In this document: piece after piece, positions 1,274 to 36,462 of the stretch | Numbering within the stretch: position 1 is the first letter of the stretch | Layout: each line of letters begins with the position of its first letter | NCBI RefSeq assembly: GCF_006345805.1 | Contig: NC_043000.1 | Coordinates: 39,742,001 to 39,806,000 of the forward strand | Length of the DNA stretch: 64,000 bases | Source of the DNA: Octopus sinensis | Lineage: Eukaryota | Direction: 5' to 3' | Position numbers and translations under genes: made by a program | Notes under the pieces: model-generated | Told to the model about the DNA's origin: nothing | The model's database searches: none | The model's input: only the letters and a program-made list of their open reading frames with translations

Positions 1274-1659
1274 AAGGAGCACTCCGTCGGTTACGACGAT
1301 GAGGGTCCCAGCTGATACGATCAACGGAACAACTTGCACGTGGAATTAACGTGCAAGTGGCTGAGCATGCCACAGACACGGGTACCCTTAACGTAGTTCT
1401 CGAGAAGATTCAGCGTGACACAGAGTGTGACAAGGCTGGCCCTTTGAAATACAGGTACAACAGAAACAGGAAGAAAGAGTGAGAGAAAGTTGTGGTGAAA
1501 GAGTACAGCAGGGTTCACCACTACCCCCTGCAGGAGCCTTGTGAAGCTTTAGGTGTTTTCGCTCAATAAACACTCACAATGCCCGGTCTGGGAATCAAAA
1601 CCGCGATCCTACGACTGCGAGTCCGCTGCCCTAACCACTGGGCCATTGCGCCTCCACAA
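1274..1659 (-). mobile_element. tRNA-derived SINE, full length, with 14-bp TSD
   Basis: The minus-strand head TGTGGAGGCGCAATGGCCCAGTGG...GGTTTTGATTCC has Pol III A- and B-box-like motifs. ACTAATTTAAATAA is duplicated at 1260-1273 and 1660-1673. Confidence 0.85.
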
Positions 1660-1770
1660 ACTAATTTAAATAACAAGAATATGAAATGGAAGCAAAATTA
1701 ATGATATGAAAAATAAATATAATTGAAGTATGTAAATAATATGAATATGCACACAGATACATTTACGGAA

Positions 1771-2008
1771 CTATATATATATATATAAATATATGTATGT
1801 GTGTTGTGTGTATGTATGTATGTATGTATGTATGTATACATATATATGTACAAGACACACGCTCACATAAACAAGTTTATATATATATATATATATAAAT
1901 ATATGTATGTGTGTTGTGTGTATGTATGTATGTATGTATGTATGTATACATATATATGTACAAGACACACGCTCACATAAACAAGTTTATATATATATAT
2001 ATATATAT
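1771..2008. repeat. 120-bp tandem duplication of a TA/TATG microsatellite block
   Basis: Sequence at 1801-1890 recurs at 1921-2010 with an exact 120-nt period. Confidence 0.85.
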
Positions 2009-2308
2009 AATAGAAATATTAAAATTACTAAGTCTCTCTAAAAGAGATTACGGCAGCGTTCCTGGAAATTAATAGTTATCGCCATACTAATATGGCATTC
2101 TTATAAAAATAAGAAAAAAGCTGTCCGCTTATTAGCTCCATGAGGCCATCGCCTTAAGTTAGCTATTCGATACACAAACTGTATCCATATAACCTTCGAA
2201 CAAGGGAGGTCAGTCGCTCCACACTACTTGACCGACAGCTACAGACGCGTTTCAGGGTATTTGCCCTTTGTCAATGCAGCGTAGTCAGACCCAGTAGGTG
2301 TCGCTTCT
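2008..2308 (-). mobile_element. Hammerhead-bearing short repeat (retrozyme/Penelope pLTR-like), downstream part of the Tx1 target site
   Basis: 2008 onward is near-identical to 7721-7896. It contains the HHR motif and abuts (TA)n. Confidence 0.75.
2238..2280 (-). ncRNA. Minimal type-I hammerhead ribozyme (U3-A8 core variant)
   Basis: The minus strand reads GCUGCA-UUGACAA-AGGG(CAAAUA)CCCU-GAAA-CGCG-UC^UGUAGC. Stem I has 6 bp, stem II 4 bp, stem III is the palindrome ACGCGU, and the cleavage triplet is GUC. Confidence 0.8.
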
Positions 2309-2535
2309 AAAATCTTTATTATGATTATAAAAATCTTACAGAGATAGTACATTACAATACAAAACATAATTACAAAAAGTTTACGTTGTTCGTTTGATAT
2401 GTTGATTATTGATTATGATACTAGACTTTACTTTTCTCCTTTTTTTTTAAATTAAAAATGATTTTGGCCAGCTAGGTATATCACAGTCAGGATTCTTACC
2501 CGACAGCCTAAGAGCCCAGAGACTATTTTCTCCCT

Positions 2536-5500
2536 TCATGATGACCAAGCAGGGTTACTCACACCCACCTTTTTTATCACATCCTTCCATCGATTCACAT
2601 ACTTTTTCTGTGTCAGGTTCCTCTTCTCTAAATCCATCTTGCTCTTTAGATGGTATCTGAAGTATTTTAACATACCATATCCAGAGACAAAGGATCCTGA
2701 CACCAAACCTTCCAATCTAGTTCTCCACACACACTCTTTCAGTACTGCCACCGTACAGTGAAAACAAGCCTCACCTTCCTTTGAGAGTCCAGCTGGCGGT
2801 ATCATCTTCATTATAGAACCAGCCGATAGCTGTACTCGTCCCAGATGCGACAACACGTGTTCTACGTAACTTATTAAGCCTGAGAGCTCCTGACAATGTA
2901 CAAAAGCGTGCTGGACGGTTTCATCGTCCAACCTACATCTTGGACATGTCGGTGGCACTGACATTCCATGCCTATATAACTTATCGCGAACAGGTAGAGC
3001 ATTCCTATAGCACTGCCAAGTCAGGGATTTTTGGTAATTGTCCAAATACCCCGGCTTGAAAGTCTTCTTAAACAGGTCGGATAGTTGATCCTCATCGAAC
3101 CCCAGAGCCCCTCTTAGGATGTCGTCATTTTTTGCCTCTACCATCCTTCTATAAAATGTCGAGGTGGTATTCCCGCAGCCGGCTTTGCCTATCTTGTGGA
3201 TCAGCCAGAGTGCCTGTCGGCACTCTTTCTGCCATAATGTCAGATTCCGTCTTTTAATGAAACCGGGTTTAAATCTCTCCATAGAGTCCGGTTGCGGGAA
3301 GAAATTATCTGCCAGCGGACTCCACACCTTATCACCTTCCAGGTGAAACCAGAGATGTCTCAGTCTCAGCGCATGCCTGCGCATCATTAACCAAGGTATA
3401 CCCAGCCCACCCTTTAGTGGTTCCTGGCAACACACGGAGCGCCTTACAAGTGGCTTTCCTCCCTTCCACAAAAAGCGGAAAAGGAGTCGATCCAACTTGC
3501 TTAGCCACAAATCGGGGCAAGGCACGACAGTCAGGCGATAGGTGATTACAGATGCTATAAACACCTGTTCCACCTCCGCCCTCCCTTTCAAGGAAAGATG
3601 CCTTCCGGACCACTCCCGAACTATGGCTCCTACCTTGGTCACTACCTCGCTCCAATTTTTCTCCGTCTGGGAGTCTGAACCAAACCAAACTCCAAGCAAT
3701 TTAACAGGACCATCTGTCCAGTGTCCAACAACACTGGACGATATCGGCTTGTTCCTCCAGGTGCCGAGGCGCAAACCGGTGGACTTGTCCTTGCTAACTT
3801 TTGCCCCAGCCACCGCTTCGTATCTTCGGAGAGCACCTTCTACACGAGTTAGTTGTGCTTCGTTGGACACGATGAAGGTGACGTCATCCGCATACGCAGA
3901 AACAGACTTACCGCATCCGATTTCATTAGGATTGCATCTCACCGTCTCCAACTCCCGCAGCAATGGCTCAAGAGCCAAAACGTACAGGAGAGGGGACAAG
4001 GGACATCCTTGACGAACTGAACGCTTAATCGAAAACGGTTCCGTTAAGTAACCGTTTATGTGGACTGTGGACTTGATACCGCTGTACATAGCTGATATCC
4101 ACCCGCGAAAGTCAGGGCCTAGCCCAGCCGCTTCGAGAACCGTCGCCAGGTACTGATGATCTACCCTATCAAATGCTTTACTTTGCCGGCTAATTGCCCA
4201 ACCCTGTCTATAGTGTAGCGTAGAAGGTGAAGATTATCTTCGATCGACCTGCCTGGGATTGCACATGTCTGTGCCTTTCCCACAAGTTTTTCCATGACGA
4301 CCTTCAACCTTTCTGCTAACACCTTGGCCAAAATCTTTAACTCTACATTAAGTAGAGTTATGGGCCTATAATTACTAATATTATCCCCCTTGCTCGGGTC
4401 TTTCTGGATCAGCGTCACAACTCCCCGGCTCACAGAACTGGGAATCCTCCCATTCTGTTGCCAGTTTGCGTAGACGCTTGCCAGTATGTCCCCGAACAAG
4501 TCCGGCATACAACAATAAAACTCATAGGGCAGACCATCCAGTCCCGGCGACTTTTCCCGGGCGCATTCAGCCAAAACCCCTCTTACCTCCGCGGGAGTAA
4601 TCGGTCCTTCACAGCGTTCCGCTCTGCGTGGCAAGAGCCGAGGCCCACCAGCTAGGAAGTTCTGTAAGTCCTCTCCTCGCTCGAGTGGATCGCCCTCCCC
4701 AAACAACCGAGCGAAATGCTGTTGAAAGACCTTCTGTATCTCCTCCTGTCCATAGATTTTGCGTCCCTGTTCGTCAGTTAAAGACTTAGTAGAGGACTTT
4801 TTGCCCTTCTGACTCTCCACATGACGTGCCCATCCGGCATCATTAATACCTTCTCGTTTCACTGCACGTAGCTTAGCTCTGACTCTACATCCTTCATGCT
4901 TGGCATTGAGGTGACGGTACAAGATCGTTCTCTCTGCTAACACTCTAGATGCACAGCCAGATCCCATTGCCTCGTCTAAGTTCTTAACTAAATCGCCCTC
5001 TATTCTAGACCTATCTAAACTTAGCTGGTTGCTAAATCTAGTGGACTCCAAACGGATGGCTCTTTTGAGGGCGATCCACCATCTATTATTAATGATGGTT
5101 CCACATAATGCCCTCTGGACTAATTCCATAATCCGGTTACGGAAAGCTTCACAAGCCAAAATAGACTTGTTCATTTTCCAGTATCCGGGTCCCTGTTTAT
5201 GGCATTTATCTACATGTACCTCACACGTCACTAATTTGTGATCCGTGTAAGGCACAATACAAAATTGTGGACAGCTAATGCTATTCCTATCTCGTTCTTT
5301 AACAAATACCCTATCTATATACGATCTGCGTGAGCCGTCATTGTTACTCCACGTCCACTGTGGAATGCTCGGCTCATCCATTCGAAACCGATCTACTAGA
5401 TTAAAGCTCGTCAGTAGACCCTTGAGGCAAGAATTTCTCCCTTCTATCAGACGAGCCCACACTATCTATCCGCGCATCGATGATAGTGTTGAAATCCCCT

Positions 5501-5907
5501 ACCAATACTACCGTTTTAGACGTCACTAAAAAGTGCTCCAAGTTCCGATAAAAACCAGTCTGCCTACCCTCATTAGGAGCATAAACAGCTACCAACCTGA
5601 AGGACTGCTTACTCACGTGAGTTACATCGAGGACAACCAGCCTACCTTCTGGGTCCATAAAGACAGTACTTACCTGTAAGTCCAAGTTCTTCCTGATAAG
5701 GACTGTCACGCCTGCACTTCCTCCTCGGCTAGGAGAAATAAATTTCTCGTAACCATTGAGAAGATGCGAGAACGCTTGGGTTCCTCTCATTTTGGACTCG
5801 GTGACAATGGCTACATCTATTCTGTGTGTCCTGAGGTCGTCCAGCAAGCAAGCCTGTTTCCATTTCGACCCCATTCCACGCACATTTATACAGCCCAACT
5901 TAATCAT
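2536..5907 (-). pseudogene. Tx1-type ORF2 (EN-RT-CCHC), frameshifted twice
   Basis: Motifs: MIKLGCINVRG, LVGDFN (APE), KSPGLDG, YRPITLL, VRQGCPLSP, AYADD (RT), CPRC...HAFVHC. It is split over ORFs 5401-5907, 4161-5462 and 2536-4089. Confidence 0.92.
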
Positions 5908-5931
5908 CGATGAATGAAGAAAGTTTGTTAC

Positions 5932-7422
5932 TTACGGTTGTGAGAGGGAGCATGGCAGCTTTTGTCTGCCTGCCTCCCCCACACTCTCCGTTGTTGCTGG
6001 GCATTTAACCGGCGTTGCCACCGGGCTCTGGGATGGAGTGGCTGCCGGGCTAATATTCAATTTTCCAGCTATCACCTCTTGTGTGACATCTTTAATCAGG
6101 TTGTCCCTCACGTGTAGTTGGAAGAGTCTCTCCTTCCATTCCTCCTCTCCAACCTTCGCATACCTCCAATCCGGGTTTTTTTCCGATGATTTGAAACATT
6201 TTATGTTTGGTTTCGCTTTTATGTACCAAACTACTCTCTCGTTTTTTGTGTTATAAGCAATGCACCTATCGGTTTTTTTTAATTCTTTTAAAGTTGGGGG
6301 CTGGGGTTTAATGAAATGCTGGCCTACAAAAGTAGTGCCAGCGGGGTGGGATTGGATAATTTTTTTGTGTTGTTCTTCTGCGTTTGTTTTTCTTTTTGTT
6401 TGGGGTGGGGAGTCCGGGGTATTGGATTTCTTCCTTTTGTTGGTTACAGTCGTATATTCCATTACTTCCAGTTCTTTTCCATTTGATAAATTATTTTCCC
6501 CCTCGTTTTCGTTTTCGTTTTGTTTTCCATTCATTTTCTTTTCCTCCTTTTGACTTTCATTTTGCTTTTTCCGGGTATTCTCTTTTGTTGTTGCTGTGAT
6601 GTCTGCTTTGTTCTCCACAGCGGTTTGAATGGGGGCATTAACGGGTTTTTTCTTTTTGCACTCTGAGCGGACGTGACCCTTCTGCCCACATTTGAAACAT
6701 CTGGGCCTACGTCCCTCCACCGATACCCGCATAGTGTGTCCATCCCCCACGAAGACCCTGTCTGGCAAACTCTCCAGCGTTGCATTGTCAGCTTGAACGA
6801 TCATTTCAAGCTGCTGACCTTTCCAAAATTTTGCCTCTTTCATCCTCATGTTTAAAATGTTTAATTTCTCTTCTACGTCGAATACGACCGCTGTTGCTGC
6901 CCACATTACATCGTAACCTGTTGGTATATCCTCTATTGTTACCTTAGCTGTTCTGCGCCCTAAGTACGTGGGCAGCAACAGGATGTCTGCACTCTTCAAC
7001 GTTTGAGTTGAAATTTCCTTCGCTATGCTAGCCGACTCGAAATGCGCTTCAATAGCAGCGCTTCTCACTCCTCGGCCAACATAGCGAACCTTGTTCCAAA
7101 TTGGTGCCATGCACCGTTCTACCAATTCATTTTTTACATCTGCAATCTTTTTTTCCTTAATATTATATACCTTATAAATTACCGTCTTCTCACGGATTGC
7201 TTGTAAGGTGTCAGGGGGCGGTATTATTCTCGTTTCTTCTCCATTCCTTTGTATGAACTTTCTGAACTTGAAGAGATCCCCCATTGCTACTTCCAGTTCT
7301 ATAACATTGCCTCCAACGGCTTCCGAAAAACTTTGTTTCTCCTTTGTATCCTTTTGCTTTCCATTATTTATAACTTCTCCCATCTCGGGAAAATCAGAAT
7401 TTGACGTTAAGTCAAGATCCAT
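5932..7422 (-). CDS. Tx1-type ORF1 protein (RRM-like region plus one CCHC zinc knuckle), open frame
   Basis: First ATG is at 7422 (MDLDLTSNSD). Knuckle CFKCGQKGHVRSEC. Alignable by eye to ORF1 of copy 4. The stop is 24 nt before the ORF2 ATG. Confidence 0.85.
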   Translation of the reverse strand: MDLDLTSNSDFPEMGEVINNGKQKDTKEKQSFSEAVGGNVIELEVAMGDLFKFRKFIQRNGEETRIIPPPDTLQAIREKTVIYKVYNIKEKKIADVKNELVERCMAPIWNKVRYVGRGVRSAAIEAHFESASIAKEISTQTLKSADILLLPTYLGRRTAKVTIEDIPTGYDVMWAATAVVFDVEEKLNILNMRMKEAKFWKGQQLEMIVQADNATLESLPDRVFVGDGHTMRVSVEGRRPRCFKCGQKGHVRSECKKKKPVNAPIQTAVENKADITATTKENTRKKQNESQKEEKKMNGKQNENENEGENNLSNGKELEVMEYTTVTNKRKKSNTPDSPPQTKRKTNAEEQHKKIIQSHPAGTTFVGQHFIKPQPPTLKELKKTDRCIAYNTKNERVVWYIKAKPNIKCFKSSEKNPDWRYAKVGEEEWKERLFQLHVRDNLIKDVTQEVIAGKLNISPAATPSQSPVATPVKCPATTESVGEAGRQKLPCSLSQP

Positions 7423-7640
7423 ATTAAAATGCAAGTGACTTGTCACAAGAGACAAGATAAAAGTTAATTCCACACTGAGTTAATAGTTCATATATAAAAA
7501 GAAATTTTCTACCCCGAAGGGCGAAAATTACTTTGTTCCACAAGTTAATAATCCAAAAACTGTACGTGTAAATCCAGAACAGAACGAACTAACATAACAG
7601 CTTACAGCGTAAAATAATCCGACGTAATCCAAGGAAAAAT

Positions 7641-7896
7641 CAGTAGGTGTCGCTTCTGACTATCTCTGTTCGAAGGTTTTATTTACCTAGTTTCTGTGGA
7701 ATACATCCACTTGTTTTCAATAATAGAAATATTAAAATTACTAAGTCTCTCTAAAAGAGATTACGGCAGCGTTCCTGGAAATTAATAGTTATCGCCATAC
7801 TAATATGGCATTCTTATAAACATAAGAAAACAATTGTCCGCTTATTAGCTCCAGGAGGCCATCGCCTTAAGTTAGCTATTCGATACACAAACTGTA
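7641..7896 (-). mobile_element. Upstream part of the same HHR-repeat tandem (Tx1 target site)
   Basis: TSD, then 63 nt, then a near-identical copy of the sequence starting at 2008. Confidence 0.8.
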
Positions 7897-8060
7897 GCTG
7901 TCGGTCAAGGAGTGTGGAGCGACTGACCTCCCTTGTTCGAAGGTTATATGGATACAGTTTGTGTATCGAATAGCTAACTTAAGGCGATGGCCTCATGGAG
8001 CTAATAAGCGGACAGCTTTTTTCTTATTTTTATAAGATTGCCATATTAGTACGGCGATAA

Positions 8061-8061
<1 letters not shown>
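7893..8061 (+). repeat. Inverted partial copy of the HHR repeat, forming a long hairpin with ~7785-7896
   Basis: Reverse complement of ~2075-2243. It starts TGTAGCTGTCGG and ends at (TA)n. Confidence 0.85.
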
Positions 8062-8107
<46 letters not shown>

Positions 8108-8155
8108 ATATATGTACAGTAGTTACATGTGTGTATATATATATATACATATGTA

Positions 8156-8573
8156 GGCGCAGGAGTGCCTCTGTTGTAAGTAGCCTGCTTACCAACAACA
8201 TAGGTCCGGATTCAGTCCCACAGCGTGGCACCTTGGGCAAGTGTCTTGTACTATAGCCTCGAGCCGACCAAAGCCTTGTGAGTGGATTTGGTACACTGAA
8301 ACTGAAAGAAGCCCGTCGTGTATATATATATATATATATATATATTTGTATGTATGTATGTATGTGTGTGTGTTTGTGTGTCGATGTTTGTCCCCCAGCA
8401 ATTGCTTGGCAATCGATGTTGGTGTGTTTACGTCCCCGTAACTTAGTGGTTCTGCCAAAGAGACTGATATAATAAGTACTAGACTTACAAAGAATACGTC
8501 CTGAGCTCGATTTGTTCGATTATGGGCGGTGCTCCAGCATGGCTGCAATCAAATGACTGAAACAAATAAAAGA
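8156..8573 (+). mobile_element. tRNA-derived SINE with internal TA/TG microsatellite
   Basis: Head GGCGCAGGAGTG...GGATTCAGTCCC, 3' end CAAATGACTGAAACAA. The same family occurs at 25637, 33343 and 39330. Confidence 0.85.
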
Positions 8574-8613
8574 ATGAATATATATATATTTAAATATACA
8601 TATATATGTATGC

Positions 8614-8695
<82 letters not shown>

Positions 8696-8702
8696 TATTA
8701 TG

Positions 8703-8736
<34 letters not shown>

Positions 8737-8761
8737 TGTATGTATGATATATATATAATAT

Positions 8762-8823
<62 letters not shown>

Positions 8824-9196
8824 TAGAAGAAATGAGGTAATCAGAAGATCGGATGGTTTATATTTACAGATATTTATTTATACATTACATTTTTTATATA
8901 TATATCATATCACTTAGATCATTAGCGCTTTCTCCCATTCTAGTGGGATTTTCAAATCAAAATAAGTTCCTTTGTGGGGAATTTTAATCATTTTATAGAG
9001 TTTCGTAGTGGTGGGGGAGGAATATAAGACAGTACAAGAGGGTGAGGTGGATGAGGAGAAAGTGAGAGAGAGAACATGTGTGTATGTGTATGTGTATGTG
9101 TGTGTGTGTGTGTTTGTATCTGAGGTGAGTGCTAAAGAGAAAGAGGGGAAGGGAGAGAGAAGAAGAAGGAAAGAATTCTTTTGGTCTGCTGGGCAG

Positions 9197-9371
9197 AATA
9201 TTGACTCCAAGGGGGCTCTAAGAATTTCAGCTTTGACCACTTCACAGTGTCACTGAGTGTGTGGTGGCGGGGAGGTAGGCCATAATATTGACTCCAAGGG
9301 TGTTCTAAGAATTTCAGCTTTGACCACTTCACAGTGTCACTGAGTGTGTGGTGGCGGGGAGGTAGGCCATA
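9197..9371. repeat. 87-bp tandem duplication
   Basis: AATATTGACTCCAAGGG...GGTAGGCCAT starts at 9197 and again at 9284. Confidence 0.85.
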
Positions 9372-10039
9372 AATTATATTTCCTTTTATCATTGTGAGAA
9401 TGGTCAAATGCTTTTTGGGGTTTAAGAATTCTTTCCACTTTTTATGATCGTTTTGTGGATGTGTGTGTGTGTGTCTGTGTGTGTGTCTGTATGTGTGTGT
9501 CTGTGTGTGTCCGTGTGTGTTTGTGTGTGTGTGTGCGTGTGTGTGTGCGTGTGTCTGTGTGTTTGGAGAAGGGGAGAGAGACAAAAAAAGAAAAAGAAAA
9601 ATAAGGGAGGAAGGGGAAAAATTGTGTTGATATTTATACCACTATATACATATACACGCTTATACATGAAATATTTGAAAAAAAAACTTTTATCGGTTCA
9701 AAATGAACAACTAAATTACACCATCTTGAAATTTTATATCATAGGAAAGTTAAAATTAAAGTGACAATTAAAAAGTAAAGATGAAGTAAATTATAAAAAT
9801 ATTATAATGTATATAACATGCAATACATATATATACACATACACACATATATATATACATATACAGACATATACTAAATGTTCTACTATATCAGATTGTA
9901 AATCGAAAGATGTGTCCTTCAATGTCACTATATATACATGCTTATACATGAAATATTAGAAAAAAACACCTTCTATCGATTCAAAATGAACAATCAAATT
10001 ACACCATCATTGCACCATATATATATATAGAGAGAGAGA

Positions 10040-10282
10040 GAGGGAGGAGTGTGGTTGTATACTGTCAACTTAAAGTAACAGTAAGGGAACTACACCACCG
10101 CTGTTTAGCCCTATGAAACACCGACGCTTCCTGTCGACCTCGACACATTTCCTGTGTCCTTATATATTTACGAAGGGGAGACAACTACCCCCAACAGCTA
10201 GGCCTGCATCTAGAGACACGCATGTTTCAGGGTCTTTGCCCATCATCGATCTAGAGTAGCAGAGGCCTGCTAGCTGAATATG
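10040..10282 (-). mobile_element. Second, different hammerhead-bearing repeat remnant, flanking the 3' end of Tx1 copy 2
   Basis: Contains an HHR-like motif, ends in (GA)n/(TA)n, and its body is unlike the 2008-2308 repeat. Confidence 0.55.
10210..10254 (-). ncRNA. Degenerate minimal type-I hammerhead ribozyme
   Basis: The minus strand reads CUAGA-UCGAUGA-UGGG(CAAAGA)CCCU-GAAA-CAUGCGUG-UC^UCUAG. Stems I and III pair, but core positions 3/4 and the first stem-II pair deviate. Confidence 0.6.
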
Positions 10283-13200
10283 AAATCTTTATTAAGATCA
10301 TGCGAATTTATATAGAATTGGACATCACAGGACAAACAATTACAAAGAATGTTATGAGAGTTTTAAAAAAAAATTTTAATTTAATTATAATGTAACACGA
10401 ACGAAAACTTGTCTTACTTTTGCCTTTAAACGAAAACTTGGCTTACTTTTGCCTTTATAACGAGAACTTTAGTGCGTTTATTTAATTTTTTTTGTTTTAA
10501 AAGACATTAGAAATTATAACATATGTAAAATGAAAAGGAATGGGAAGTGCCGATTTCGAATTTTGAACCCGGCAGCCTATAAGGCCAAGCAACTAATTTT
10601 TCCTTTCTTCGATGATTAAGCTGGGTTACTAACACCCACCTTTCTCATCACATCCTTCCAACGTTTCACATACTCTTTCTGTGGCAGGCTCCTCTTCTCC
10701 AACCCCGTCTTGCTCTTCAGATGATATCTGAAGTATTTCAACAAACCGAGACCAGAGACAAAGGACCCTGTCACTAAACCTTCCATTCTGGTTCTCCACA
10801 CACACTCTTTCAGTACTGCCACCGTACAGTAAAAACAAGCCTTACCTTCCTTTGAGAGTCCAGTTGACGGTATCATCTTTATCATAGATCCAGCCGACAG
10901 CTGTACTCGTCCCAGATGCGACAACACGTGTTCAACGTAACTTATCAAGCTTGACAGCTCCCGACATTGTACAAAGGCGTGTTGAACGGTTTCATCGTCC
11001 AACCCTCATCTTGGACACGTCGGTGGCACTGACATTCCGTGCCTGGATAACTTATCGCGAATGGGTAATGCATTACTATAGCACTGCCAGGTCAGCGATT
11101 TTTGGTAATTGTCCAAATACCCCGGCCTGAAAGTCTTCTTAAACAGGTTGGAAAGTTGATTCTCATCGAACCCGAGAGCCCCTCCTAGGACGTCGTCATT
11201 TTTTGCCTCTACCAGCCCTCTATAGAACACCGAGGTGGTATTCCCGCTGCCGGTCTTGCCCACCTTGTGGATCAGCCAGAGTGCCTGTCGGCACTCCTGC
11301 CATAAAGTCAGGTTACGTCTTTTAATGAAACCGGGTTTAAATCTCTCCATAGAGGCCGGTCGCGGGAAGAATTCCTCTGCCAGCGGACTCCACACCTTAT
11401 CACCCTCCAGGTGACACCAGAGATGTCTCAGCCTCAACGCATGCTTGCGCATCATCAGCCAAGGCATCCCCAGCCCACCCTTTAGCGGTTCCTGGCAACA
11501 CACGGAGCGTCTCACAAGTGGCTTTCCTCCCCTCCACAAAAAGCGGAACAGGAGTCATTCCAACTTGCTTAACCACGAATCGAGGCAAGGCACGACGGTC
11601 AGGCGGTAGGTGATGACAGAGGATATAAGCATCTGTACCACCTCCGCCCTCCCTTTCAAGGAAAGATGCCTTCCGGACCACTTCCGTACTATAGCTTCTA
11701 CCTTGTTCGCTACCTCGCTCCAATTCTTCTCCGTCTGAGAGTCTGGACCAAACCAAACTCCGAGCAATTTAACAGGACCATCTGTCCAGTGCCCAACAAC
11801 ACTGGACGATATCGGCTTGTTCCTCCAGGTGCCGAGGCGCAAACCGGTGGACTTGTCCTTGTTAACTTTTGCCCCTGCCACCGCTTCGTATCTTCGGAGA
11901 GCACCTTCTACACGAGGTAGCTGTGCTTCGTTGGACACGATGAGAGTGACGTCATCCGCATAGGTAGAAACAGACTTACCGCATCCGATTTCATTAGGGT
12001 TGCCTCCCAACTTCCGCAGCAAAGGCTCAAGAGCCAAAACATACAGGAGCGGGGACAAGGGACACCCTTGACGAACTGAACGCTTGATCGAAAACGGCTC
12101 CGTTAGGTAACCGTTTATCTGGACTGTGGACTTGATGCCGCTGTACATAGCTGAGATCCACCCGCAAAAGCCAAGGCCCAGCACAGCCGCCACGAGGACC
12201 GCCGCCAAGTATCGATGGTCTACCCTATCGAACGCTTTACTTTGGTCTAAATGGACCAATGCCCCTCCTTTGCCGGCTAATTTCCCGACCCTGTCTATAG
12301 TGTAGCGGAGAAGGTGAAGATTGTCCTGGATCGACCTGCCTGAGATTGCACATGTCTGTGCCTTCCCGACAAGTTTCTCCTCGACAGCCGTCAACCTTTT
12401 TGCTAACACCTTGGCCAAAATCTTAAACTCTACACTAAGAAGAGTTATTTTCCCCGGCGCAACCGGCCATAACCTCTCTTACCTCCGTGGGAGAGATCGA
12501 TCCTTCTCAGCATTCCGCCTCACGTGTCGAGAGCCGCGGCCCACCGGCTAGGAAGTCCTTTAAGGCATCCCCTCGCTCGAGCGGACCGCCATCCCCAAAT
12601 AACCGGGCGAAATGCTGGTGAAGGACCTTCTGCATCTCCTCCTGTCCATAGATCTTGCGACCCTGCTCGTCAGTTAAAGACTTAATACAGGACTTTTTGC
12701 CCTTCTGACTCTGCTCACGACGGGCCCATCCGGCAACGTTAATACCTTCTCGTTTCCCGGCACGTAACTTAGCTCTGACTCTACACCCCTCATGCTTGGC
12801 GTTGAGGTGACGGTACAAGACCGTTCTCGCTGCCAACACTCCAGATGTACAGCCAGATTCCATTGCCTCGTCTAAGTTCTTCACTAATTCGCCCTCTATT
12901 CTAGTCCTATCTAAACTTAGCTGTTTGCTAAATCTAATGGACTCCAAACGGATGGCTCTTTTGAGGGCGAGCCACCATCTATTATTAATGATGGTGCCAC
13001 ATAATGCCCTCTGGACTAATTCCTTAATCCGGGTACGGAAAGCTTCACAAGTCAAATAGACTTGTTCATTTTCCAGTATCCGGGACCCTGTCTATGGCAT
13101 TTATCTACCTGTACCTCACACGTCACAAGTTTGTGATCCGTGTAAGGCACAACAGAAAATTGTGGACAGCTAACGCTATTCCTATCTCGTTCCTTAAAAA

Positions 13201-13473
13201 ATACCCTATCTATATACGATCTGCGTGAGCCGTCGTTGTTACTCCACGTCCACTGTAGAACGTTCGGCTCATCCAGTCGAAAACGGTCTACTAGATTAAA
13301 ACTCGCTAGTAGAACCTTGAAGCAAGGATTCCCTTTTCTATCGTTCGAGCCTACACTATCAACCCGCGCATCGAGAATAGTGTTGAAGTCTCCTACCAAG
13401 ACTAACGTTTTAGACGTCACTAGAAAGTGCTCCAGGTCCCGATAAAAACCGGTCTGCCCACACACATTAGGAG
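10283..13473 (-). mobile_element. 5'-truncated Tx1/L1-clade element (copy 2), close relative of copy 1
   Basis: ORF2 fragments at 13052-13465, 12507-13055, 11555-12418, 11006-11539 and 10616-11002 align to copy 1. There is an internal deletion near 12445 and the 3' end is AATAAAGATTTC. Confidence 0.9.
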
Positions 13474-26315: not shown

Positions 26316-26467
<152 letters not shown>

Positions 26468-26626
26468 CGGTCGTGTTATTCTTTGCTCCGCAGTGAAGGA
26501 TTGTTTTTGTGCTGAAAAGTTTGAAAATTTGCTGTTTTGGTCGTCGAGGCCACTTCTTTTCTGCTGTTGCAGCAGAGTTCTGCTGTTCTTTCCTCCCTTG
26601 TTTCAAGAGGGAAGTGACGAAAAGAC

Positions 26627-27670
26627 ATGAATTTACAACCAGTCTCCTCCGAGTCGGAGGAAAACGTTGAAAATTTGTTTGAAGGCATGAAGGCGAAAAT
26701 GCGGGTGGAGGAAGGTAGAAGTAAAGAGACGAAAATGTGGGAGGAGGAAGGTAAAAGTAAAGAGACGTCTCACGCGCTCGTTACAAAAGCAGATGACAAT
26801 ATGTCTAGCGAAGCTACTACACAACAGGAAAAGTCAAAAATAAATTTTGCGAGTGCAGCAACTCGCCCCTGTGAAAACATCGTAATCAACAAAGAAGGAT
26901 TAAAGAAGTACCAAAGTTTATTAAAAAAAGAAGGTGATAATGTGAAGTTGTTCCCTCCCAGTGAATTAATTTACGCGACGGAGAGAAAAACTGTCATATA
27001 CAAGACATATAATGTGAAAAATAAGAAAATTGACTTCGTGCAGAGAGAAGCCATAGAAAAATGTTTGAGGCCGATTGGCAACAAACTACTTATATAACGA
27101 GGGGTAGTCGCTTCGGCACGGTAGAGGTGCGTTTCCCTAGCGAAGAAAAAGCTAGGGAACATTCAACAAGAACGTTGAAGTCGGAAGATGTAGTTCTCCT
27201 ACCATTTTATTTAGGAATGAGAACTTCCAGAATAACGGTCACAGACATTCCTCCCGAAATAGATGTGGACTTTATCATAGCAGCGATTCTCTTAGGCAAA
27301 GAGGAAGAAATTGCCATTCTTCAGTCTAAGAGATATCGCCACATGAACTGGTATGGACAAGACTTAGAGCTTGTGATCCAAGCAAACCCCTCGGACTTGG
27401 AAAAATTACCCAGCTCCCTCACCATTGGAGATAATACCAGCATGATGGTAATAGTCGAGGGGAGAAAGCCTAGGTATTATAAATGTGGCGAGAAAGGCCA
27501 CATAAGGTCGAGCTGCAAGAAGACAGCCAAAGAAAATACTGCAGAGGCAAGCACGACGCCGAAAACAACAACTACACCGCTAGAAATAGCAGCAACGTCG
27601 CGCACCCCAGTTGCCGAAGTTCAGCCGACAACAGGAGAAAACAACAACAACAACGACGACGACGACGACG

Positions 27671-27726
<56 letters not shown>

Positions 27727-28014
27727 AACAACGATGACAACAACAACAACATCCAGGAGTGGGTCACCATAGAACCTTCAAAAAGAAGACGGAAACGGAA
27801 AAATCCACCCTCTTCGGATACACAGGACTATACTCCGACACAGACAAGCACACCCACACCTACAAATACAGTCGCAAACACACGTAACCAAAAAAACATA
27901 CACACTGTAAAAAGCACACACAAACACACACACACCTACCACAAGCACACACACACACCTACAAACACCCACGCTTCTACAAGCACACACACACACCCCT
28001 CCACAATCGCCTAA
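26627..28014 (+). pseudogene. Tx1 ORF1 with one frameshift and a poly-Asn/Asp tract
   Basis: ORFs 26627-27097 and 27061-28014 align to copy-1 ORF1. The knuckle reads YYKCGEKGHIRSSC (first Cys lost). Confidence 0.8.
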
Positions 28015-28365
28015 CAAAAAAAAAGAAACACCTTCACGGCGATAAATAAAAACAATAACCCATTAAGAGGAAAAATTATTTTAATGAAATCGGCGAAAAA
28101 ATATATTGTAACAGATATAAATAGTACTATTTCTGAAAATGTCGAATTTTATACAATAGATAACACTGATTATTTTGAAATAAAAAAATCTTTTGCGAAG
28201 GACGTCGGCCCGTTACAGATGAACTTTTCGAGCCATCTGTACAGGCAATTCGCAAAAACCTGACCTCGCAAAACACAACACTCACAGACAGAAAAGAGGA
28301 GGGTGAAACTACACCCTCTCTTCCGTTAAAACAGTAAGTTTTAAATTTTCGACTAATTTTTCACA

Positions 28366-31149
28366 TTCTCGTTTAAACTCGGTTGTATAAATATTCGCGG
28401 CCTGGGGTCGTATTGGATGCAAGGCTACCTCCTTAACGACCTTAGGTCGCATCGTTTGGATGTAGTGGTAATTACCGAATCCAGACTGAGTGGGCTGCAG
28501 GCCTTTACGCCCCTTCTAAACGGCTACGAGAAATACGTTTCTCCCTGTCGACCTGGAGGGGGCGGAGGAGTGGCAGTGCTGGTCAGGAAAAACCTGGATT
28601 TAGAGATTAGAACTGTCTTTATAGATCCGGAAGGCAGGTTGGTCGTTTTGGATGTGACGCACAGCAGTCGTAAAGTGTTCAGGCTGGTCGCTGTCTATGC
28701 TCCCTGCGAAGGAAAAGCCGGGCAGAAAGAGTATTTCAAAAGCCTAGACCAACATCTCAAAGCTAAACATGAAGGGTGCATTGTCAGGGCTAAGATCCGT
28801 GCAATGAGACAGGAAGGGATCAACGCAGCCGGATGGGCCCGGGTGGTAGAGGGCCAGCGTGGCAACAACTCAACCATTCGTTCCTTGACGGGCCCAAATG
28901 GTCGATTAGTAAACGAACCGAGGAGATGTGCAAGGTGTTTCATGATCATTTCGCCCTGCTATTCGGGAGGAGCGGCGGGCTGGAGCGCGGGGAGAAGCTC
29001 GCAGACTCCTAGCCGGTTCGCCGCGTCTATCGGGGCCGGACGCAGAATCTTGTGAGGCGCCGATCACAGCCAAAGAAGTCGAGGATATGTTGGCAGACTG
29101 CGGCGGGGACAAATCGCCGGGACTCGATGGTCTGCCTTACGAACTCTATAGTAGCATGCCAGACTTGTTTGGGCACCTACTTGCATGCGTGTACACCAAC
29201 AGGCAGCAGAACGGGAGAATTCCTAAGTCTGTGAGCCGAGGGGTGGTAGCGCTGTTAAGAAAGGACCCAAACAAGGGGGATTTAATTGATAATTTTCGGC
29301 CCATCACTCTGCTTAACGCAGAGTTGAAGATCTTGGCCAAGGTCTTAGCAAAAAGGTTGGCGCGGGTCGTGGGTGAACTTGTTGGCGAGGCGCAAACTTG
29401 CGCCATCCCTGGAAGGACCATCCACGACAATCTCCACTTTCTACGCTATGCCTTAGAAAGGGTAAATAGGATTCCTGGCAAGGGTGGGGCTATGGTCCAC
29501 TTGGACCAATCGAAAGCGTTTGATAGGGTGGACCATCAGTATCTGGCGGTGGTCCTCGCGGCGGCTGGCTTCGGCCCGACCTTCCGCGGATGGATCATCG
29601 CTTTATACAGCAACATCGAATCGGTAGTTCGGGTAAATGGTTTCCTTTCGGAGCCGTTCAGCATTGAACGTTCGGTACGTCAAGGGTGTCCTCTCTCCCC
29701 GCTTCTCTACGTTTTGGCCCTCGAGCCGTTGCTGAGGAGGCTGGAAACTATGAGAGGCACTCCGCAAGATCTAGCGTGCGGAAAGTCAGCTTCGGCGTAT
29801 GCGGACGACATCACCGTCATCGTTTCCCGAGTCGAGCACCTACAGTGGGTGGGTGAGGCCTTAAGGGACTACGAAGCGGTGGTAGGAACGAAAGTCAACC
29901 GGGATAAATCGGTCGGCTTGCAACTCGGCACCTGGAGGGGCAAGTCGTTGTCTTCCGACAGCGTCGTAGGACGTTGGACGGAAAGACCGGTGAAAATGCT
30001 TGGAATCTGGTTAGGTCCAGATCTCCAGATAGAGAAGAACTGGAGCGAGGTGGCGAGAAGGGTGGCTCTCCTAACTCAGACATGGTCTGAGCGGAAGCAG
30101 TCCTTGAAAGGGAGGGCGGAGGTTGCAGAGGTGTTTATCGCCTCTGTAATCACTTACCGCCTGACCGTAGTGCCTTGCCCCGATTCGTGGCTGAACAAAC
30201 TGGAACGCATGCTCTTTCGCTTTTTGTGGAGGGGCAGCAGACCTCTTGTAAGGCGCTCTATTTGCTGCCAAAAGCCGCTGAAGGGTGGGTTAGGGATGCC
30301 GTGGCTAAAAATGCGCAGACATGCGCTCAGGCTTAGGCACCTCTGGATTTACCTGGACGGTGAGCAGGTGTGGTCTCCGTTCGTCAAGCTGTTATTTCCA
30401 CAGTTCACATCGTTTAACGAATTGAACCCATGGATCAAGTGTAGACCGAGGTTGGGCATGTGGCATGCAGAGTGCTATCAGGCACTCGTGCTTCTCTCCC
30501 AGTCGGGCAACGCCGGTGGCGGGGGTACTACCTCGTTCTTCTATAGAGGGTTAGTAGAGTTTAAGTGTGACGACGTCCTAGGAGAAACTCTGGGCTTCGA
30601 CGAAAATCAACTGGCCAGCCTGTTCCAAAGAACATTCGGTCCGGGGCCTATGGATAATTACCAAAAGTCCCTGGCCTGGCAATGTTACAGAGGAGCTTTA
30701 CCGGTTCGAGATAAGCTCTTTAGACATGGGTGTGCACCTTCGCCGGTTTGTGCAAGATGTGAGAGGGACAGTGAAACTGTCCTGCACGCGATTGTGCAAT
30801 GCCCCAAGGTGACTGAACTATGGGCTTATGTCGAACACCTGCTGTCGCATTCGAGAAGAGTACAACTGTCGAGCGAATCTGTAATGAAGATAGTTCCGCC
30901 GACCTCCTGAGTAGGGAGGAGCGAGCCTGTTTTCTCTCGGTAGTTGCTATGGCGAAAGAAGTAGTGTGGAAGACGAGAGTAAAAGGAATTGCAACAGGCA
31001 TGTTTATCTCCAGTCTCGAGCTAATCGACTTTTTCGTTTTCCACATGAAACGGAAAATAAGGCTGGAGAAGAAATGCCTGTCGCAAAGTGTGTTTCATAA
31101 AAGATGGAAGTCTATAGCAAGTATGTTGCGAGTGAAAGAACCTGTTTAA
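28366..31149 (+). pseudogene. Tx1 ORF2, C-terminal EN deleted and frameshifted; RT block open (29087-30910)
   Basis: KLGCINIRGL; deletion junction EYFKSL|DQHLKAKH near 28745; HLDQSKAFD, QGCPLSP, AYADD, CARC...HAIVQC. Confidence 0.88.
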
Positions 31150-31366
31150 TCAAGAATGTGAAAAAGGAGAAAGCAAAGACTTCAGTGTGAGTATGTGGTT
31201 TGTGGGGTCAACTGCGTCCTCCGATTCATTTTTTTGTTATTCACTCATTATCGTTTAATTGTATATATTTTAATTGTTTGTTTATTCATATGTTTCGTCT
31301 CATTCGATACCCTGGCCCCAACGTTTGTTTTGTCCCCTCTTTTTCTCAACCTTATGGTGAATAAAG

Positions 31367-31412
<46 letters not shown>

Positions 31413-34886: not shown

Positions 34887-35256
34887 AACATCAGATGACA
34901 GAAGAAGAATCCTCAATATCTACCATGTTTTAAAGATTAAAGGAAAATATTATATAAAACAAATGAATAACATTGTTTCTACAAATCTGTTGAAGAATTC
35001 CTGTGAAACATTTGCCCTGAAATATTAATATTAACCAAATTTTTGAACGTCAATGACTGGAGTGTCAAGAAGTGAAGCCTGTGTTCTGATTGAAGTTGGA
35101 TAAATTTATGAAAGTGTTGCTAAACAAAGATAACACTGGACAGAAATACAGTAGTAGAAGTGTATATAAGGAATAAAGTATAAAAACGAAAGCCAGAAAA
35201 ATATATTAACTGGGATTTGAGAGGAAAAGTAAGAGAAATTGATTTCCCATGAACAC

Positions 35257-36462
35257 ATGAGAAAAGAGATGACATCATATGACTGTAATATCTGTACAAA
35301 GTCCTTCTCTCGAAAAAGTAACCTAATTATGCACAAATGTATTCACACAGGAGAGAAACCATATCATTGTGAAATCTGTGGTAAATCATTCTCTGAAAAT
35401 AGTGACTTATCTAAACACATACGTATTCATACAGGAGAGAAACCATATCATTGTGATATCTGTGGTATATCATTCTCTGTAAGAAGTAAAGTTGGTGCAC
35501 ACAAACGTACTCATACTGGAGAGAAACCATATCATTGTGATGTCTGTGGTAAATCATTCTTTCAAAATAGTGACTTATCTAAACACACACGTATTCATAC
35601 GAGAGAGAAGCCATATCACTGTGATATCTGTGGTAAATCATTCTTTCAAAATAGTCACTTAACTAGGCACATACATAGTCATACAGGAGAGAAACCATAT
35701 CATTGTGATATCTGTGGTAAATCATTCTCTCAAAATTGTGAATTGTCTACACACATACGTAGTCATACAGGAGAGAAACCATATCATTGTGATATCTGTG
35801 GTAAATCATTCTCTCAAAATTGTGAATTGTCTTCACACATACGGAGTCATACAGGAGAGAAACCATATCATTGTAATATCTGTGGTAAATCATCTTCTCG
35901 AAGTAGTGACTTAGCAAAACACATACGTATTCATACAGGAGAGAAACCATATCATTGTAATATCTGTGGTAAATCATTCTCTCGAAGTAATAACTTAACT
36001 AGACACAATCGTATTCATACAGGAAAAAAGCCATATCATTGTGATATCTGTGGTAAATCATTCTCTCAAAGTGTTCAATTATCTACACACAGACATATTC
36101 ATATGGGAGAGAAACCATATCGTTGTGATATCTGTGGTAAATCATTCTCTCAGAGTGGTCACTTAACTGGACACAAACATATTCATACAGGGGAGAAACC
36201 ATATTGTTGTGATATCTGTGGTAAATCATTCTCCCTAAGAAGTCAAGTTGCTGTGCACAAACGTATTCATACAGGAGAGAAATCATATCAGTGTGTTATC
36301 TGTGGTAAATCATTCTCTCGAAGTAATAATTTAACTAGACACAATCGTGTTCATACAGGAGAGAAGCCATATGACTGTGATATCTGTGGTAAATCATTCT
36401 CTCAAAGTAATGACTTAACTAGGCACAAATCTATTCATACAGGAGAGAAAGGAAATGAATAG
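35257..36462 (+). CDS. C2H2 zinc-finger protein, 14 tandem fingers, no effector domain
   Basis: Regular 28-aa CxxC...HxxxH units with TGEKP linkers. First ATG is at 35257 (MRKEMTS). Confidence 0.92.
   Translation: MRKEMTSYDCNICTKSFSRKSNLIMHKCIHTGEKPYHCEICGKSFSENSDLSKHIRIHTGEKPYHCDICGISFSVRSKVGAHKRTHTGEKPYHCDVCGKSFFQNSDLSKHTRIHTREKPYHCDICGKSFFQNSHLTRHIHSHTGEKPYHCDICGKSFSQNCELSTHIRSHTGEKPYHCDICGKSFSQNCELSSHIRSHTGEKPYHCNICGKSSSRSSDLAKHIRIHTGEKPYHCNICGKSFSRSNNLTRHNRIHTGKKPYHCDICGKSFSQSVQLSTHRHIHMGEKPYRCDICGKSFSQSGHLTGHKHIHTGEKPYCCDICGKSFSLRSQVAVHKRIHTGEKSYQCVICGKSFSRSNNLTRHNRVHTGEKPYDCDICGKSFSQSNDLTRHKSIHTGEKGNE

What the first reader, a model, noticed from the sequence alone, without database searches (positions are those of the whole stretch)
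2238..10283. Candidate new system: a Tx1-clade LINE lineage that inserts just upstream of hammerhead ribozymes in retrozyme/Penelope-type repeats
Seen: both minus-strand Tx1 copies (2309-7640 and 10283-13473) end 65 and ~68 nt 5' of a hammerhead cleavage site, in the same orientation as the ribozyme. The two host repeats differ in stem I, stem III and body. They share GTTTCAGGGT(A/C)TTTGCCC (2249-2266 and 10224-10241, 17/18 identical), which lies 44 and 42 nt from the common element terminus AAATCTTTATT. Copy 1 has a 17-bp TSD, so the HHR belongs to the target and not to the LINE. In both cases the insertion lies at the outer edge of the extended stem I. Known: Tx1-clade APE retrotransposons are often target-specific (snRNA genes, tRNA arrays, microsatellites, the Xenopus Tx1D transposon), and R2 relies on host transcription plus a ribozyme. 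Inference: the LINE may parasitise HHR tandem repeats, being co-transcribed with them and released by hammerhead cleavage. I know of no report of this but could not search. It rests on two insertions.
Basis: partly seen in the sequence, partly recalled or inferred. Interest (0 to 1): 0.92.

Follow-up and report, generated by a model that had tools for sequence, protein, structure and literature searches.

The report
LINE nested in hammerhead-type retrozyme repeats
Two related copies of an octopus-type jumping gene (a LINE) sit at the same spot, about 65 bases upstream of a hammerhead-ribozyme-like motif, in two diverged copies of a Penelope-type repeat; this points to targeted insertion into those repeats, but it rests on only two cases and nothing shows that the ribozyme is used.

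Summary
The observation largely holds. There are two minus-strand APE/RT LINE copies (2309-7640 and 10283-13473). Both end in AATAAAGATTT, 65 and 68 nt 5' of a hammerhead-like cleavage site on the same strand. Copy 1 has an exact 17-bp target-site duplication.

The two junctions are independent. ORF2 is 88-89% identical with a third-codon-position excess of differences, the flanks are only 68% identical, and the outer flanks are unrelated.

The host repeats are homologous members of one Penelope-type retrozyme superfamily. Locus 1 has the classic partial-tandem plus inverted-copy architecture inside a (TA)n tract.

The "hammerheads" are non-canonical, and Rfam finds none. Copy 1 carries the U3-A8 core covariant already documented in Penelope-like elements. 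Copy 2's core is degenerate.

Best reading (about 0.5): a new target preference in an L1/Tx1-type LINE lineage, comparable to Tx1L in Tx1D or Kibi in (TC)n. A relative in the same window sits in (CT)n.

There is no upstream ribozyme at locus 1, and cleavage would leave a 65-nt tail.

I could retrieve no further copies from any collection, so n stays at 2. Interest is moderate.

The parts
2309..7640 (-). LINE copy 1, full length (5332 bp). ORF1 with CCHC knuckle at 5932-7473. ORF2 is broken into 5401-5907 (APE), 4161-5462 (RT N-terminal part) and 2536-4089 (RT C-terminal part plus zf-RVT). The 3' UTR is 2309-2535 and ends in AATAAAGATTT(T).
   Evidence: ORF list; Pfam; sequence
2292..2308 (.). 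Target-site duplication, 3' copy (CAGTAGGTGTCGCTTCT on the + strand)
   Evidence: 17/17 identical to 7641-7657
7641..7657 (.). Target-site duplication, 5' copy
2238..2280 (-). Hammerhead-like type I motif of repeat family 1: GCUGCA/UUGACAA/A-GGG-CAAAUA-CCC-U/GAAAC-GC-GUC|UGUAGC. It has the U3-A8 core covariant, and the predicted cleavage is between 2244 and 2243.
   Evidence: relaxed descriptor (the only hit in the window, 0 in 30 shuffles); pairs listed; no Rfam hit; U3-A8 variant documented in PMC4209133
2010..2308 (-). Host repeat family 1, 3' part of the full unit (X), running from the insertion point to the unit end next to (TA)n
   Evidence: 97% identical to 7720-7896 and, inverted, to 7892-8064
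7658..7723 (-). Host repeat family 1, 5' part of the same unit (Y). Y + TSD + X gives a 365-370 nt unit that folds into a long rod.
   Evidence: fold (MFE -121.5 kcal/mol, z = -7.1)
7724..7888 (-). Partial upstream tandem copy (X') of family 1. It starts after the ribozyme, so it carries no hammerhead.
7889..8055 (+). Inverted 5'-truncated copy (X'') joined head-to-head to X'. Its 5' end coincides with the predicted hammerhead cleavage site, within a 5-nt microhomology (CTGTA). It is followed by (TA)n.
   Evidence: this architecture is described for Penelope-like elements in PMC8557442
10283..13473 (-). LINE copy 2, 5'-truncated inside the APE domain. It has a 191-bp internal deletion relative to copy 1 and the same AATAAAGATTT terminus.
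10046..10282 (-). Host repeat family 2 (237 bp), homologous to family 1 at 68% identity. In the sense orientation it ends at (TC)n(TA)n.
10209..10255 (-). Degenerate hammerhead-like motif of family 2: UCUAGA/UCGAUGA/U-GGG-CAAAGA-CCC-U/GAAAC-AUGCG-UGUC|UCUAGA. The nominal cleavage site is between 10215 and 10214.
   Evidence: fails the descriptor; no Rfam hammerhead hit

Best explanation
An L1/Tx1-type APE LINE lineage of an octopus-like genome preferentially integrates into one superfamily of Penelope-derived, hammerhead-bearing retrozyme repeats. It inserts at a fixed place in the 5' arm of the long helix I, about 65 nt upstream of the ribozyme cleavage site and in the ribozyme's orientation.

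Shown:
- Copy 1 is a clean target-primed insertion into a pre-existing repeat unit. The bottom strand was nicked at 5'-GCTTCT^GACTAT-3' and the staggered cut was 17 bp.
- Copy 2 is an independent junction at the homologous position of a 32%-diverged repeat family.

Inferred:
- The element's protein recognises DNA sequence or shape within the conserved ribozyme region. The 18-bp helix II/GAAAC block lies 41-43 bp from the nick and is the only strongly conserved stretch. The immediate nick sites are not alike.
- The conserved AATAAA six bases from the element end suggests that transcripts end a few tens of bases into the flank. That would give the RNA a short target-derived tail able to anneal to the next target, as proposed for other target-specific LINEs.
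- The repeat serves as a harmless multicopy landing site. The ribozyme's catalytic activity is not needed for this.
For: 1. Both copies of this subfamily in the window adjoin the only two hammerhead-like motifs in 64 kb, in the same orientation and at 65 and 68 nt.
2. Chance estimate: the repeats cover about 1.5% of the window. Matching position within +/-2 nt and orientation within a 365-nt unit is about 0.7%. Jointly this is of the order of 1e-6 (my arithmetic).
3. Independence of the two junctions:
- ORF2 is 88-89% identical.
- Differences by codon position are 7.8/4.3/15.2%, meaning divergence under purifying selection in separate active lineages.
- The flanks are 68% identical.
- The outer flanks are unrelated.
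4. There is an exact 17-bp TSD, and the joined flanks fold into a rod with z = -7.1.
5. Relatives are target-selective:
- Copy 4 (26465-31371) lies between (CT)n tracts.
- Relative L002 ends in (ATT)n.
- All of them share the AATAAAGA(A/T)(A/T)T terminus.
6. Target preference is a published trait of the Tx1 clade, including Tx1 inside the Tx1D transposon (PMC4494074).
Against: - There are only two junctions.
- Copy 2 has no TSD, and its upstream flank is TC-rich sequence rather than the rest of the repeat. Its history is therefore ambiguous: target deletion, 3' transduction or template switch.
- The 8-10 nt next to the two nick sites are not similar, so there is no obvious endonuclease recognition motif.
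- The two loci lie only 2.6 kb apart on the same strand.
- Close relatives at 51-56% protein identity (L001, L002) do not adjoin hammerheads.
- No further copies could be retrieved.
- Placement in the Tx1 clade was not tested by phylogeny.
Confidence: 0.5

Rival explanations
1. Coincidence or a loose local bias. The LINE has no real specificity, and two copies happened to nest in a TE- and microsatellite-rich cluster that contains Penelope-type repeats. The position match would reflect a short endonuclease-preferred motif or an accessible DNA structure such as cruciform-prone inverted arms.
For: n = 2. The nick-adjacent sequences differ. The first 31 kb of the window is a dense nest of LINEs, SINEs and microsatellites. 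The site lies within a long inverted repeat that could extrude.
Against: Same orientation and position within 2-3 nt in two diverged repeat families. These are the only two such motifs in 64 kb and both are occupied. The clade is known for target specificity.
Confidence: 0.2
2. Copy 2 is not a primary insertion into a repeat. It would be a retrocopy of a progenitor LINE plus 237 nt of its downstream repeat, made by 3' transduction or by a template switch from repeat RNA to LINE RNA. That retrocopy would have landed in a (TC)n/(TA)n tract. The junction would then have been inherited from an unseen progenitor that itself sat in a family-2 repeat.
For: The composite is bracketed by TC-rich sequence upstream (sense strand; 13474 onward) and by (TC)n(TA)n downstream (10020-10045). 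There is no TSD next to the LINE. Relatives target (CT)n.
Against: No clear TSD brackets the composite either; only TCCTCC is shared. A 5'-truncated insertion with a target deletion explains the same facts. Even if this reading is true, it still needs a second LINE-repeat junction at the same position, so it does not remove the pattern.
Confidence: 0.15
3. The LINE depends on the repeat's transcription and is released from co-transcripts by hammerhead self-cleavage, in analogy to R2 and its HDV-like ribozyme.
For: - The LINE has the same orientation as the ribozyme.
- The family-1 motif has a plausible active fold with the U3-A8 pair. Helix I covaries between the families.
- The inverted copy's 5' end falls at the cleavage site, which suggests that family-1 RNA was once cleaved.
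- Co-transcription is known to reinforce targeting in other LINEs.
Against: - Locus 1 has no ribozyme upstream of the LINE, because X' begins after it.
- Cleavage would leave a 65-nt repeat tail, whereas R2's ribozyme is part of the element and cuts at its 5' junction.
- The LINE carries its own 5' UTR and an AATAAA signal at its end.
- Copy 2's core is degenerate.
- Penelope-type hammerheads cleave weakly and are dispensable for insertion in vitro (PMC4209133; PMC11167929).
Confidence: 0.08
4. Shared ancestry or a composite element. Either one ancient LINE-repeat junction was copied as DNA, or the hammerhead module is really the LINE's own 3' end.
For: The distal 3' UTR (about 70% identical) is about as diverged as the flank at 68%. 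The two loci are 2.6 kb apart on the same strand.
Against: - The TSD places the LINE boundary at 2309, and the repeat continues on the other side.
- ORF2 is 88-89% identical with a third-position excess of differences, whereas the flank is 68% identical.
- There is no similarity beyond the repeats.
- Relatives end at the same AATAAAGA.. motif without any hammerhead.
Confidence: 0.07

Closest known systems
Tx1L in Tx1D (Xenopus laevis), and other target-specific Tx1-clade LINEs: Keno in U2 snRNA genes, Kibi in (TC)n, Koshi in (TTC)n
   Same: An APE-type LINE with an ORF1 zinc knuckle and no poly(A) tail, inserting at a fixed site of a multicopy sequence. In Tx1L's case the target is another mobile element. 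A Kibi-like relative lies in (CT)n in this same window (PMC4494074).
   Different: The target here would be a Penelope-derived, ribozyme-bearing repeat, which none of my six literature searches found reported. Specificity rests on two junctions, and clade placement was not tested by phylogeny.
R2 and its HDV-like ribozyme (co-transcription with 28S rRNA)
   Same: A target-specific LINE in the same orientation as a transcribed multicopy host unit, with a self-cleaving ribozyme nearby.
   Different: R2's ribozyme is encoded by the element and cuts at its own 5' junction. Here the ribozyme belongs to the target, lies 65 nt downstream of the 3' end, and none lies upstream at locus 1. R2 uses a restriction-like endonuclease, not APE.
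Non-LTR retrozymes and Penelope-like element pLTRs with minimal type I hammerheads
   Same: The host repeat has a 365-nt unit, a partial tandem plus an inverted 5'-truncated copy, (TA)n flanks, a rod-like fold, a short palindromic helix III and the U3-A8 core variant.
   Different: No Rfam hammerhead hit. Only about 1.5 tandem units. Family 2's core is degenerate. RNA circles and self-cleavage were not tested. No PLE RT or GIY-YIG domain turned up among the window ORFs scanned with Pfam.

Membership tests
Hammerhead ribozyme (type I) | Match to the curated covariance models (Rfam Hammerhead_1, _3, _II, HH9, HH10) | tested here: not met
   No hammerhead hit at gathering score, at E<=10 on 1500-11000, or on 150-nt pieces
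Hammerhead ribozyme (type I) | Three-helix junction with the core C3U4G5A6N7G8A9 ... G12A13A14, an A15.1-U16.1 pair and H17, allowing the documented U3-A8 covariant of C3-G8 | tested here: inconclusive
   Family 1 (2238-2280) meets it with U3-A8. It is the only hit in the window, with 0 hits in 30 shuffles. Family 2 (10209-10255) fails: its core is UCGAUGA, with U4 replaced and a U.U at pair 10.1-11.1. Helix I keeps 6/6 pairs in both families, with two double compensatory changes.
Hammerhead ribozyme (type I) | Self-cleavage after position 17 | not testable with these tools
   Indirect hint only: the inverted copy's 5' end maps to the predicted site within a 5-nt microhomology
Non-LTR retrozyme / Penelope-derived non-autonomous repeat | Tandem units of about 170-400 nt, each carrying a type I hammerhead | tested here: inconclusive
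   The unit is 365-370 nt, but only about 1.45 tandem units are present and only one carries the motif. The size range is from PMC7229834.
Non-LTR retrozyme / Penelope-derived non-autonomous repeat | PLE-type insertion architecture: partial tandem (pLTR-like), an adjacent inverted 5'-truncated copy, and a microsatellite (TA)n target | tested here: met
   From high to low coordinates, i.e. in the sense (minus-strand) direction: (TA)n at about 8056-8100, inverted X'' 7889-8055, X' 7724-7888, the full unit 7723-7658 plus 2308-2010, then (TA)n just below 2010. These criteria come from PMC8557442.
Non-LTR retrozyme / Penelope-derived non-autonomous repeat | Expression as linear and circular RNAs | not testable with these tools
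   No RNA data. The strongly structured fold (z = -7.1) is compatible with it.
Tx1-clade non-LTR retrotransposon | ORF1 with zinc knuckle; ORF2 with N-terminal APE, RT and a C-terminal zinc-binding domain; no poly(A) tail | tested here: met
   Pfam hits to zf-CCHC, Exo_endo_phos, RVT_1 and zf-RVT in that order. The terminus is AATAAAGATTT without an A-tail. These features do not separate Tx1 from L1.
Tx1-clade non-LTR retrotransposon | Phylogenetic placement of the RT within the Tx1 clade | not tested
   The closest database proteins are unnamed or 'hypothetical' (56% from a JGI metagenome, 51% from Argonauta hians). No reference Tx1 sequences were available.
Target-specific LINE | The great majority of copies sit at one site of one target sequence | tested here: inconclusive
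   2 of 2 copies in the window do. No further copies could be retrieved.
R2-like ribozyme-processed co-transcript | A self-cleaving ribozyme positioned to liberate the element's own RNA end | tested here: not met
   No ribozyme lies upstream of copy 1. The downstream one is 65 nt beyond the 3' end and belongs to the target.

The most novel reading that the evidence does not exclude
The LINE lineage does exploit the repeats' biology. Read-through transcripts would be trimmed by the host repeat's hammerhead (or end just inside the repeat), leaving a repeat-derived 3' tail that guides the RNP by base pairing to other copies of the same repeat family. LINE subfamilies and retrozyme families would then co-diversify. 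That would be a hyper-parasite homing on a ribozyme-bearing non-autonomous Penelope derivative.
Probability: 0.08. Interest if true: 0.8.

Novelty: new member of a known kind. Interest (0 to 1): 0.45.

Why it matters
If a genome-wide census confirms it, this would add a new class of target to the list for site-specific LINEs: ribozyme-bearing retrozyme / Penelope-derived repeats. It would also be a clear case of one retroelement class nesting specifically in a non-autonomous derivative of another.

It would give a natural system for asking how an APE-type LINE reads a target when the nick-adjacent sequence is not conserved and a structured block about 42 bp away is.

Separately, the locus offers genomic evidence that a U3-A8 hammerhead variant was cleaved in vivo, because an inverted copy starts at the cleavage site.

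None of this bears on host genes, and the present evidence is two junctions.

Tried and rejected
1. Rfam searches gave no hammerhead hit on the whole window at gathering score, on 9.5 kb at E<=10, or on two 150-nt pieces.
2. I tried several routes to more copies:
- A protein search with the 517-aa ORF2 C-terminus gave a best hit of only 56% identity, so the source genome is not in the collection.
- Exact look-ups of window ORFs found nothing on record.
- Loci of relatives P0001, P0002, P0003, P0005 and P0006 either end in microsatellite or AT-rich DNA, or the contig ends first.
- The look-up of P0004 failed.
3. A metagenome scan for the 18-mer returned 120 stretches, none with any further similarity to the repeats or the LINE. 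From the reading-frame context they look bacterial, many resembling ssb-type coding sequence.
4. The genome contigs and viral-contig scans found no relative.
5. Segmental duplication is rejected.
6. The idea that the hammerhead is part of the LINE is rejected by the TSD and by relatives' termini.
7. I looked for 3' UTR-target complementarity as an RNA guide. The only match is an 11-nt perfect one: ACTATCTCTGT in copy 1's UTR against ACAGAGATAGT just upstream of the nick. Six of 300 shuffles score as well, the geometry is unhelpful for priming, and copy 2's upstream target is missing, so I treat it as probably chance.
8. The third exact AATAAAGATTT at 46444-46454 has no LINE context and is a chance match.
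9. CUGANGA...GAAA strings in the 561-bp tandem repeat at about 55.1-56.9 kb are not hammerheads, because no helix II can form.
10. Six literature searches found no report of a LINE targeting hammerhead, retrozyme or pLTR sequences.
Full report
**What is there.** The window looks like an octopod genome.
- It carries three C2H2 zinc-finger arrays at 35239-36462, 46950-47912 and 59595-61097.
- It carries a sequence I read by eye as a tRNA-derived SINE.
- The best named match to the LINE protein is from Argonauta hians, at 51% identity.
- On the minus strand lie two related LINE copies.

**The two LINE copies.** Copy 1 (2309-7640) has an ORF1 with a CCHC knuckle. Its ORF2 carries APE, RT and zf-RVT domains and is broken into at least three pieces. 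Copy 2 (10283-13473) starts inside the APE domain and is 88-89% identical to copy 1 across ORF2, with a 191-bp internal deletion. Both end in ...ATC(A/T)TAATAAAGATTT. Relatives share this kind of terminus:
- Copy 4 in the window ends in GAATAAAGAAATA.
- Copy 3 ends in GAAATAAAGTAG.
- The Argonauta locus L001 ends in GGCTAATAAAGAAATC.
- The metagenomic locus L002 ends in GGCCAATAAAAGAAATC.

The element boundary is therefore well defined.

**The insertion at locus 1 is clean.**
- The 17-mer CAGTAGGTGTCGCTTCT occurs at 2292-2308 and 7641-7657, directly flanking the LINE.
- Joining only the two flanks gives a 365-370 nt unit. It folds into a long rod with MFE -121.5 kcal/mol, against -84.7 +/- 5.2 for shuffles (z = -7.1). 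The helix runs straight across the insertion point.

**What the host repeat is.** Read in the sense (minus-strand) direction, locus 1 runs as follows:
- a (TA)n tract at about 8056-8100;
- an inverted, 5'-truncated copy (7889-8055, sense on the + strand);
- a partial tandem copy (7888-7724);
- the full unit (7723-7658, the TSD, the LINE, then 2308-2010);
- a second (TA)n tract.

The three copies are 97% identical to each other. A partial tandem, a head-to-head inverted truncated copy and a (TA)n target make up the insertion signature described for Penelope-like elements (PMC8557442). The unit length falls in the 170-400 nt range of animal non-LTR retrozymes (PMC7229834). A 2026 preprint argues that these retrozymes derive from Penelope pLTRs.

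The 237-bp flank of copy 2 (10046-10282) belongs to the same superfamily. It aligns to family 1 at 68% identity over 217 positions, scoring 54 against 6.7 +/- 3.7 for shuffles. It ends at (TC)n(TA)n.

**Are they hammerheads?** Not by the standard test. No Rfam hammerhead model matches at any threshold I tried, even on 150-nt pieces, and neither motif contains CUGANGA.

Family 1 reads GCUGCA-UUGACAA-A GGG CAAAUA CCC U-GAAAC GC GUC|UGUAGC.
- This is a complete type I topology with a two-pair helix III and a palindromic loop.
- U3 and A8 stand in place of C3 and G8.
- That covariation is documented for Penelope-element hammerheads in Schistosoma, with about 1,300 hits (PMC4209133).
- A descriptor that allows this variant finds this site and nothing else in the window, with no hits in 30 shuffled windows.

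Family 2 reads UCUAGA-UCGAUGA-U GGG CAAAGA CCC U-GAAAC AUGCG UGUC|UCUAGA.
- U4 is lost and the first helix II pair is U.U, so this copy is a relic at best.

Helix I keeps six pairs in both families, with two double compensatory changes (G-C to U-A, and C-G to G-C) and one single change. This argues that the fold was selected in the ancestors of both.

One further hint suggests family-1 RNA was cleaved. The inverted copy's 5' end falls at C17|U1.1 within a 5-nt microhomology, which would happen by chance about 1.6% of the time.

**Independence of the two junctions.**
- Differences between the two ORF2s fall 7.8%, 4.3% and 15.2% on codon positions 1, 2 and 3. Much of the divergence therefore arose under purifying selection in separate active lineages.
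- The flanks differ by 32% plus indels.
- Sequence beyond the repeats is unrelated.

A DNA-level duplication of one ancestral junction is therefore not tenable. The caveat is that the distal 3' UTR (about 70% identical) is as diverged as the flank, and the loci are only 2.6 kb apart.

**Chance.** The repeats occupy about 1.5% of the window. Matching position within +/-2 nt and orientation within a 365-nt unit has a probability of about 0.7%. Both copies of the subfamily adjoin the only two such motifs in 64 kb. Taken together this is of the order of 1e-6. The estimate is post hoc and rests on two events.

**Weak points.**
- Copy 2 has no TSD. Its upstream flank is TC-rich sequence, not the rest of a family-2 unit. 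It may be an insertion with a target deletion, or a retrocopy of LINE plus 237 nt that landed in a (TC)n/(TA)n tract.
- The bases next to the two nick sites are not alike (GCTTCT^ against GAATATG^). Only the helix II/GAAAC block 41-43 bp away is strongly conserved.
- Relatives at 51-56% protein identity do not adjoin hammerheads.

**Mechanism.** The best-supported reading is a new target preference in a lineage whose relatives are visibly target-selective.
- Copy 4 (26465-31371) lies between (CT)n tracts.
- L002 ends in (ATT)n.
- This matches the published behaviour of the Tx1 clade, including Tx1 inside the Tx1D transposon (PMC4494074).

The conserved AATAAA six bases from the terminus suggests Pol II 3'-end formation a few tens of bases into the flank. 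That would give a short target-derived tail that could anneal at the next target. This step is inferred.

- No hammerhead lies upstream of copy 1.
- The downstream one would leave a 65-nt tail.
- Copy 2's core is degenerate.
- Penelope-type hammerheads cleave poorly and are dispensable for insertion in vitro.

**Search for more copies.** Every available route failed:
- The protein database holds nothing closer than 56%.
- Exact look-ups of window ORFs found nothing.
- The metagenome scan for the 18-mer returned only stretches that look bacterial and share nothing more with the repeats or the LINE.
- The prokaryotic genome and viral collections hold no relative.

The decisive test, a genome-wide census of 3' junctions, therefore remains to be done in the source assembly.

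**Novelty and verdict.** Six literature searches found no report of a LINE that targets hammerhead, retrozyme or pLTR sequences. If confirmed, this is a new member of the known class of target-specific LINEs with an unusual target, not a new kind of system.

My scores are as follows:
- Real target preference: about 0.5.
- Functional use of the ribozyme: about 0.08.
- Interest: 0.45.

Noticed in passing
window 7889-8055 (+), junction at about 7884-7893: The inverted 5'-truncated copy of repeat family 1 begins at the predicted hammerhead cleavage site (C17|U1.1), within a 5-nt microhomology (CTGTA), head-to-head with the partial tandem copy. This suggests that the template RNA had been self-cleaved by the U3-A8 hammerhead variant before reverse transcription.
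   Followed up: partly
window 26465-31371 (+), flanked by (CT)n at 26319-26464 and at 31372 to about 31410: A near full-length relative (copy 4, 67-69% nucleotide identity to copy 1) with a 607-aa RT/zf-RVT ORF lies between (CT)n tracts. It ends in GAATAAAGAAATA, so it looks like a Kibi-like (TC)n-specific element.
   Followed up: partly
window 22853 to about 25641 (+), and 25642 to about 26000: Copy 3 (a 5'-truncated relative) ends in GAAATAAAGTAG, directly against what looks by eye like a tRNA-derived SINE (GGTTCCGGGTTCAGTCCCACTGCG...) followed by TA/TG microsatellites. The AATAAAGAAAT-type tail is shared by all LINE relatives seen, including L001 and L002. From memory, not tested here, it may also be the tail of octopus SINEs.
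   Followed up: no
window 2340-2350 versus 7659-7669: An 11-nt perfect complementarity exists between copy 1's distal 3' UTR (ACTATCTCTGT in the sense orientation) and the target sequence immediately upstream of the nick (ACAGAGATAGT). Six of 300 shuffles score as well. This is probably chance. Copy 2 cannot be checked because its upstream target is missing.
   Followed up: partly
window 35239-36462, 46950-47912, 59595-61097 (+): Three long C2H2 zinc-finger arrays (84-bp periodicity, 10-16 fingers each) form a zinc-finger gene cluster of the kind expanded in octopus genomes.
   Followed up: no
window about 55126-56931: A tandem repeat of about 561 bp with at least 3.3 units, 83-100% identical. 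On the minus strand it contains CTGACGA...GAAA strings that are not hammerheads, because no helix II can form.
   Followed up: partly
window 13474 to about 19000: A long purine-rich (GA-rich on the + strand, GC skew up to 0.63) low-complexity tract lies directly upstream (in the sense orientation) of LINE copy 2. It includes 118-bp and 20-bp tandem repeats.
   Followed up: no
L001 8013-8660 (Argonauta hians): The Argonauta relative is followed by a second, tandem copy of its own 3' UTR (two GGTGAAGATGAGA...AATAAAGAAAT-type ends about 340 bp apart). This suggests a tandem or nested 3' fragment at the same site.
   Followed up: no
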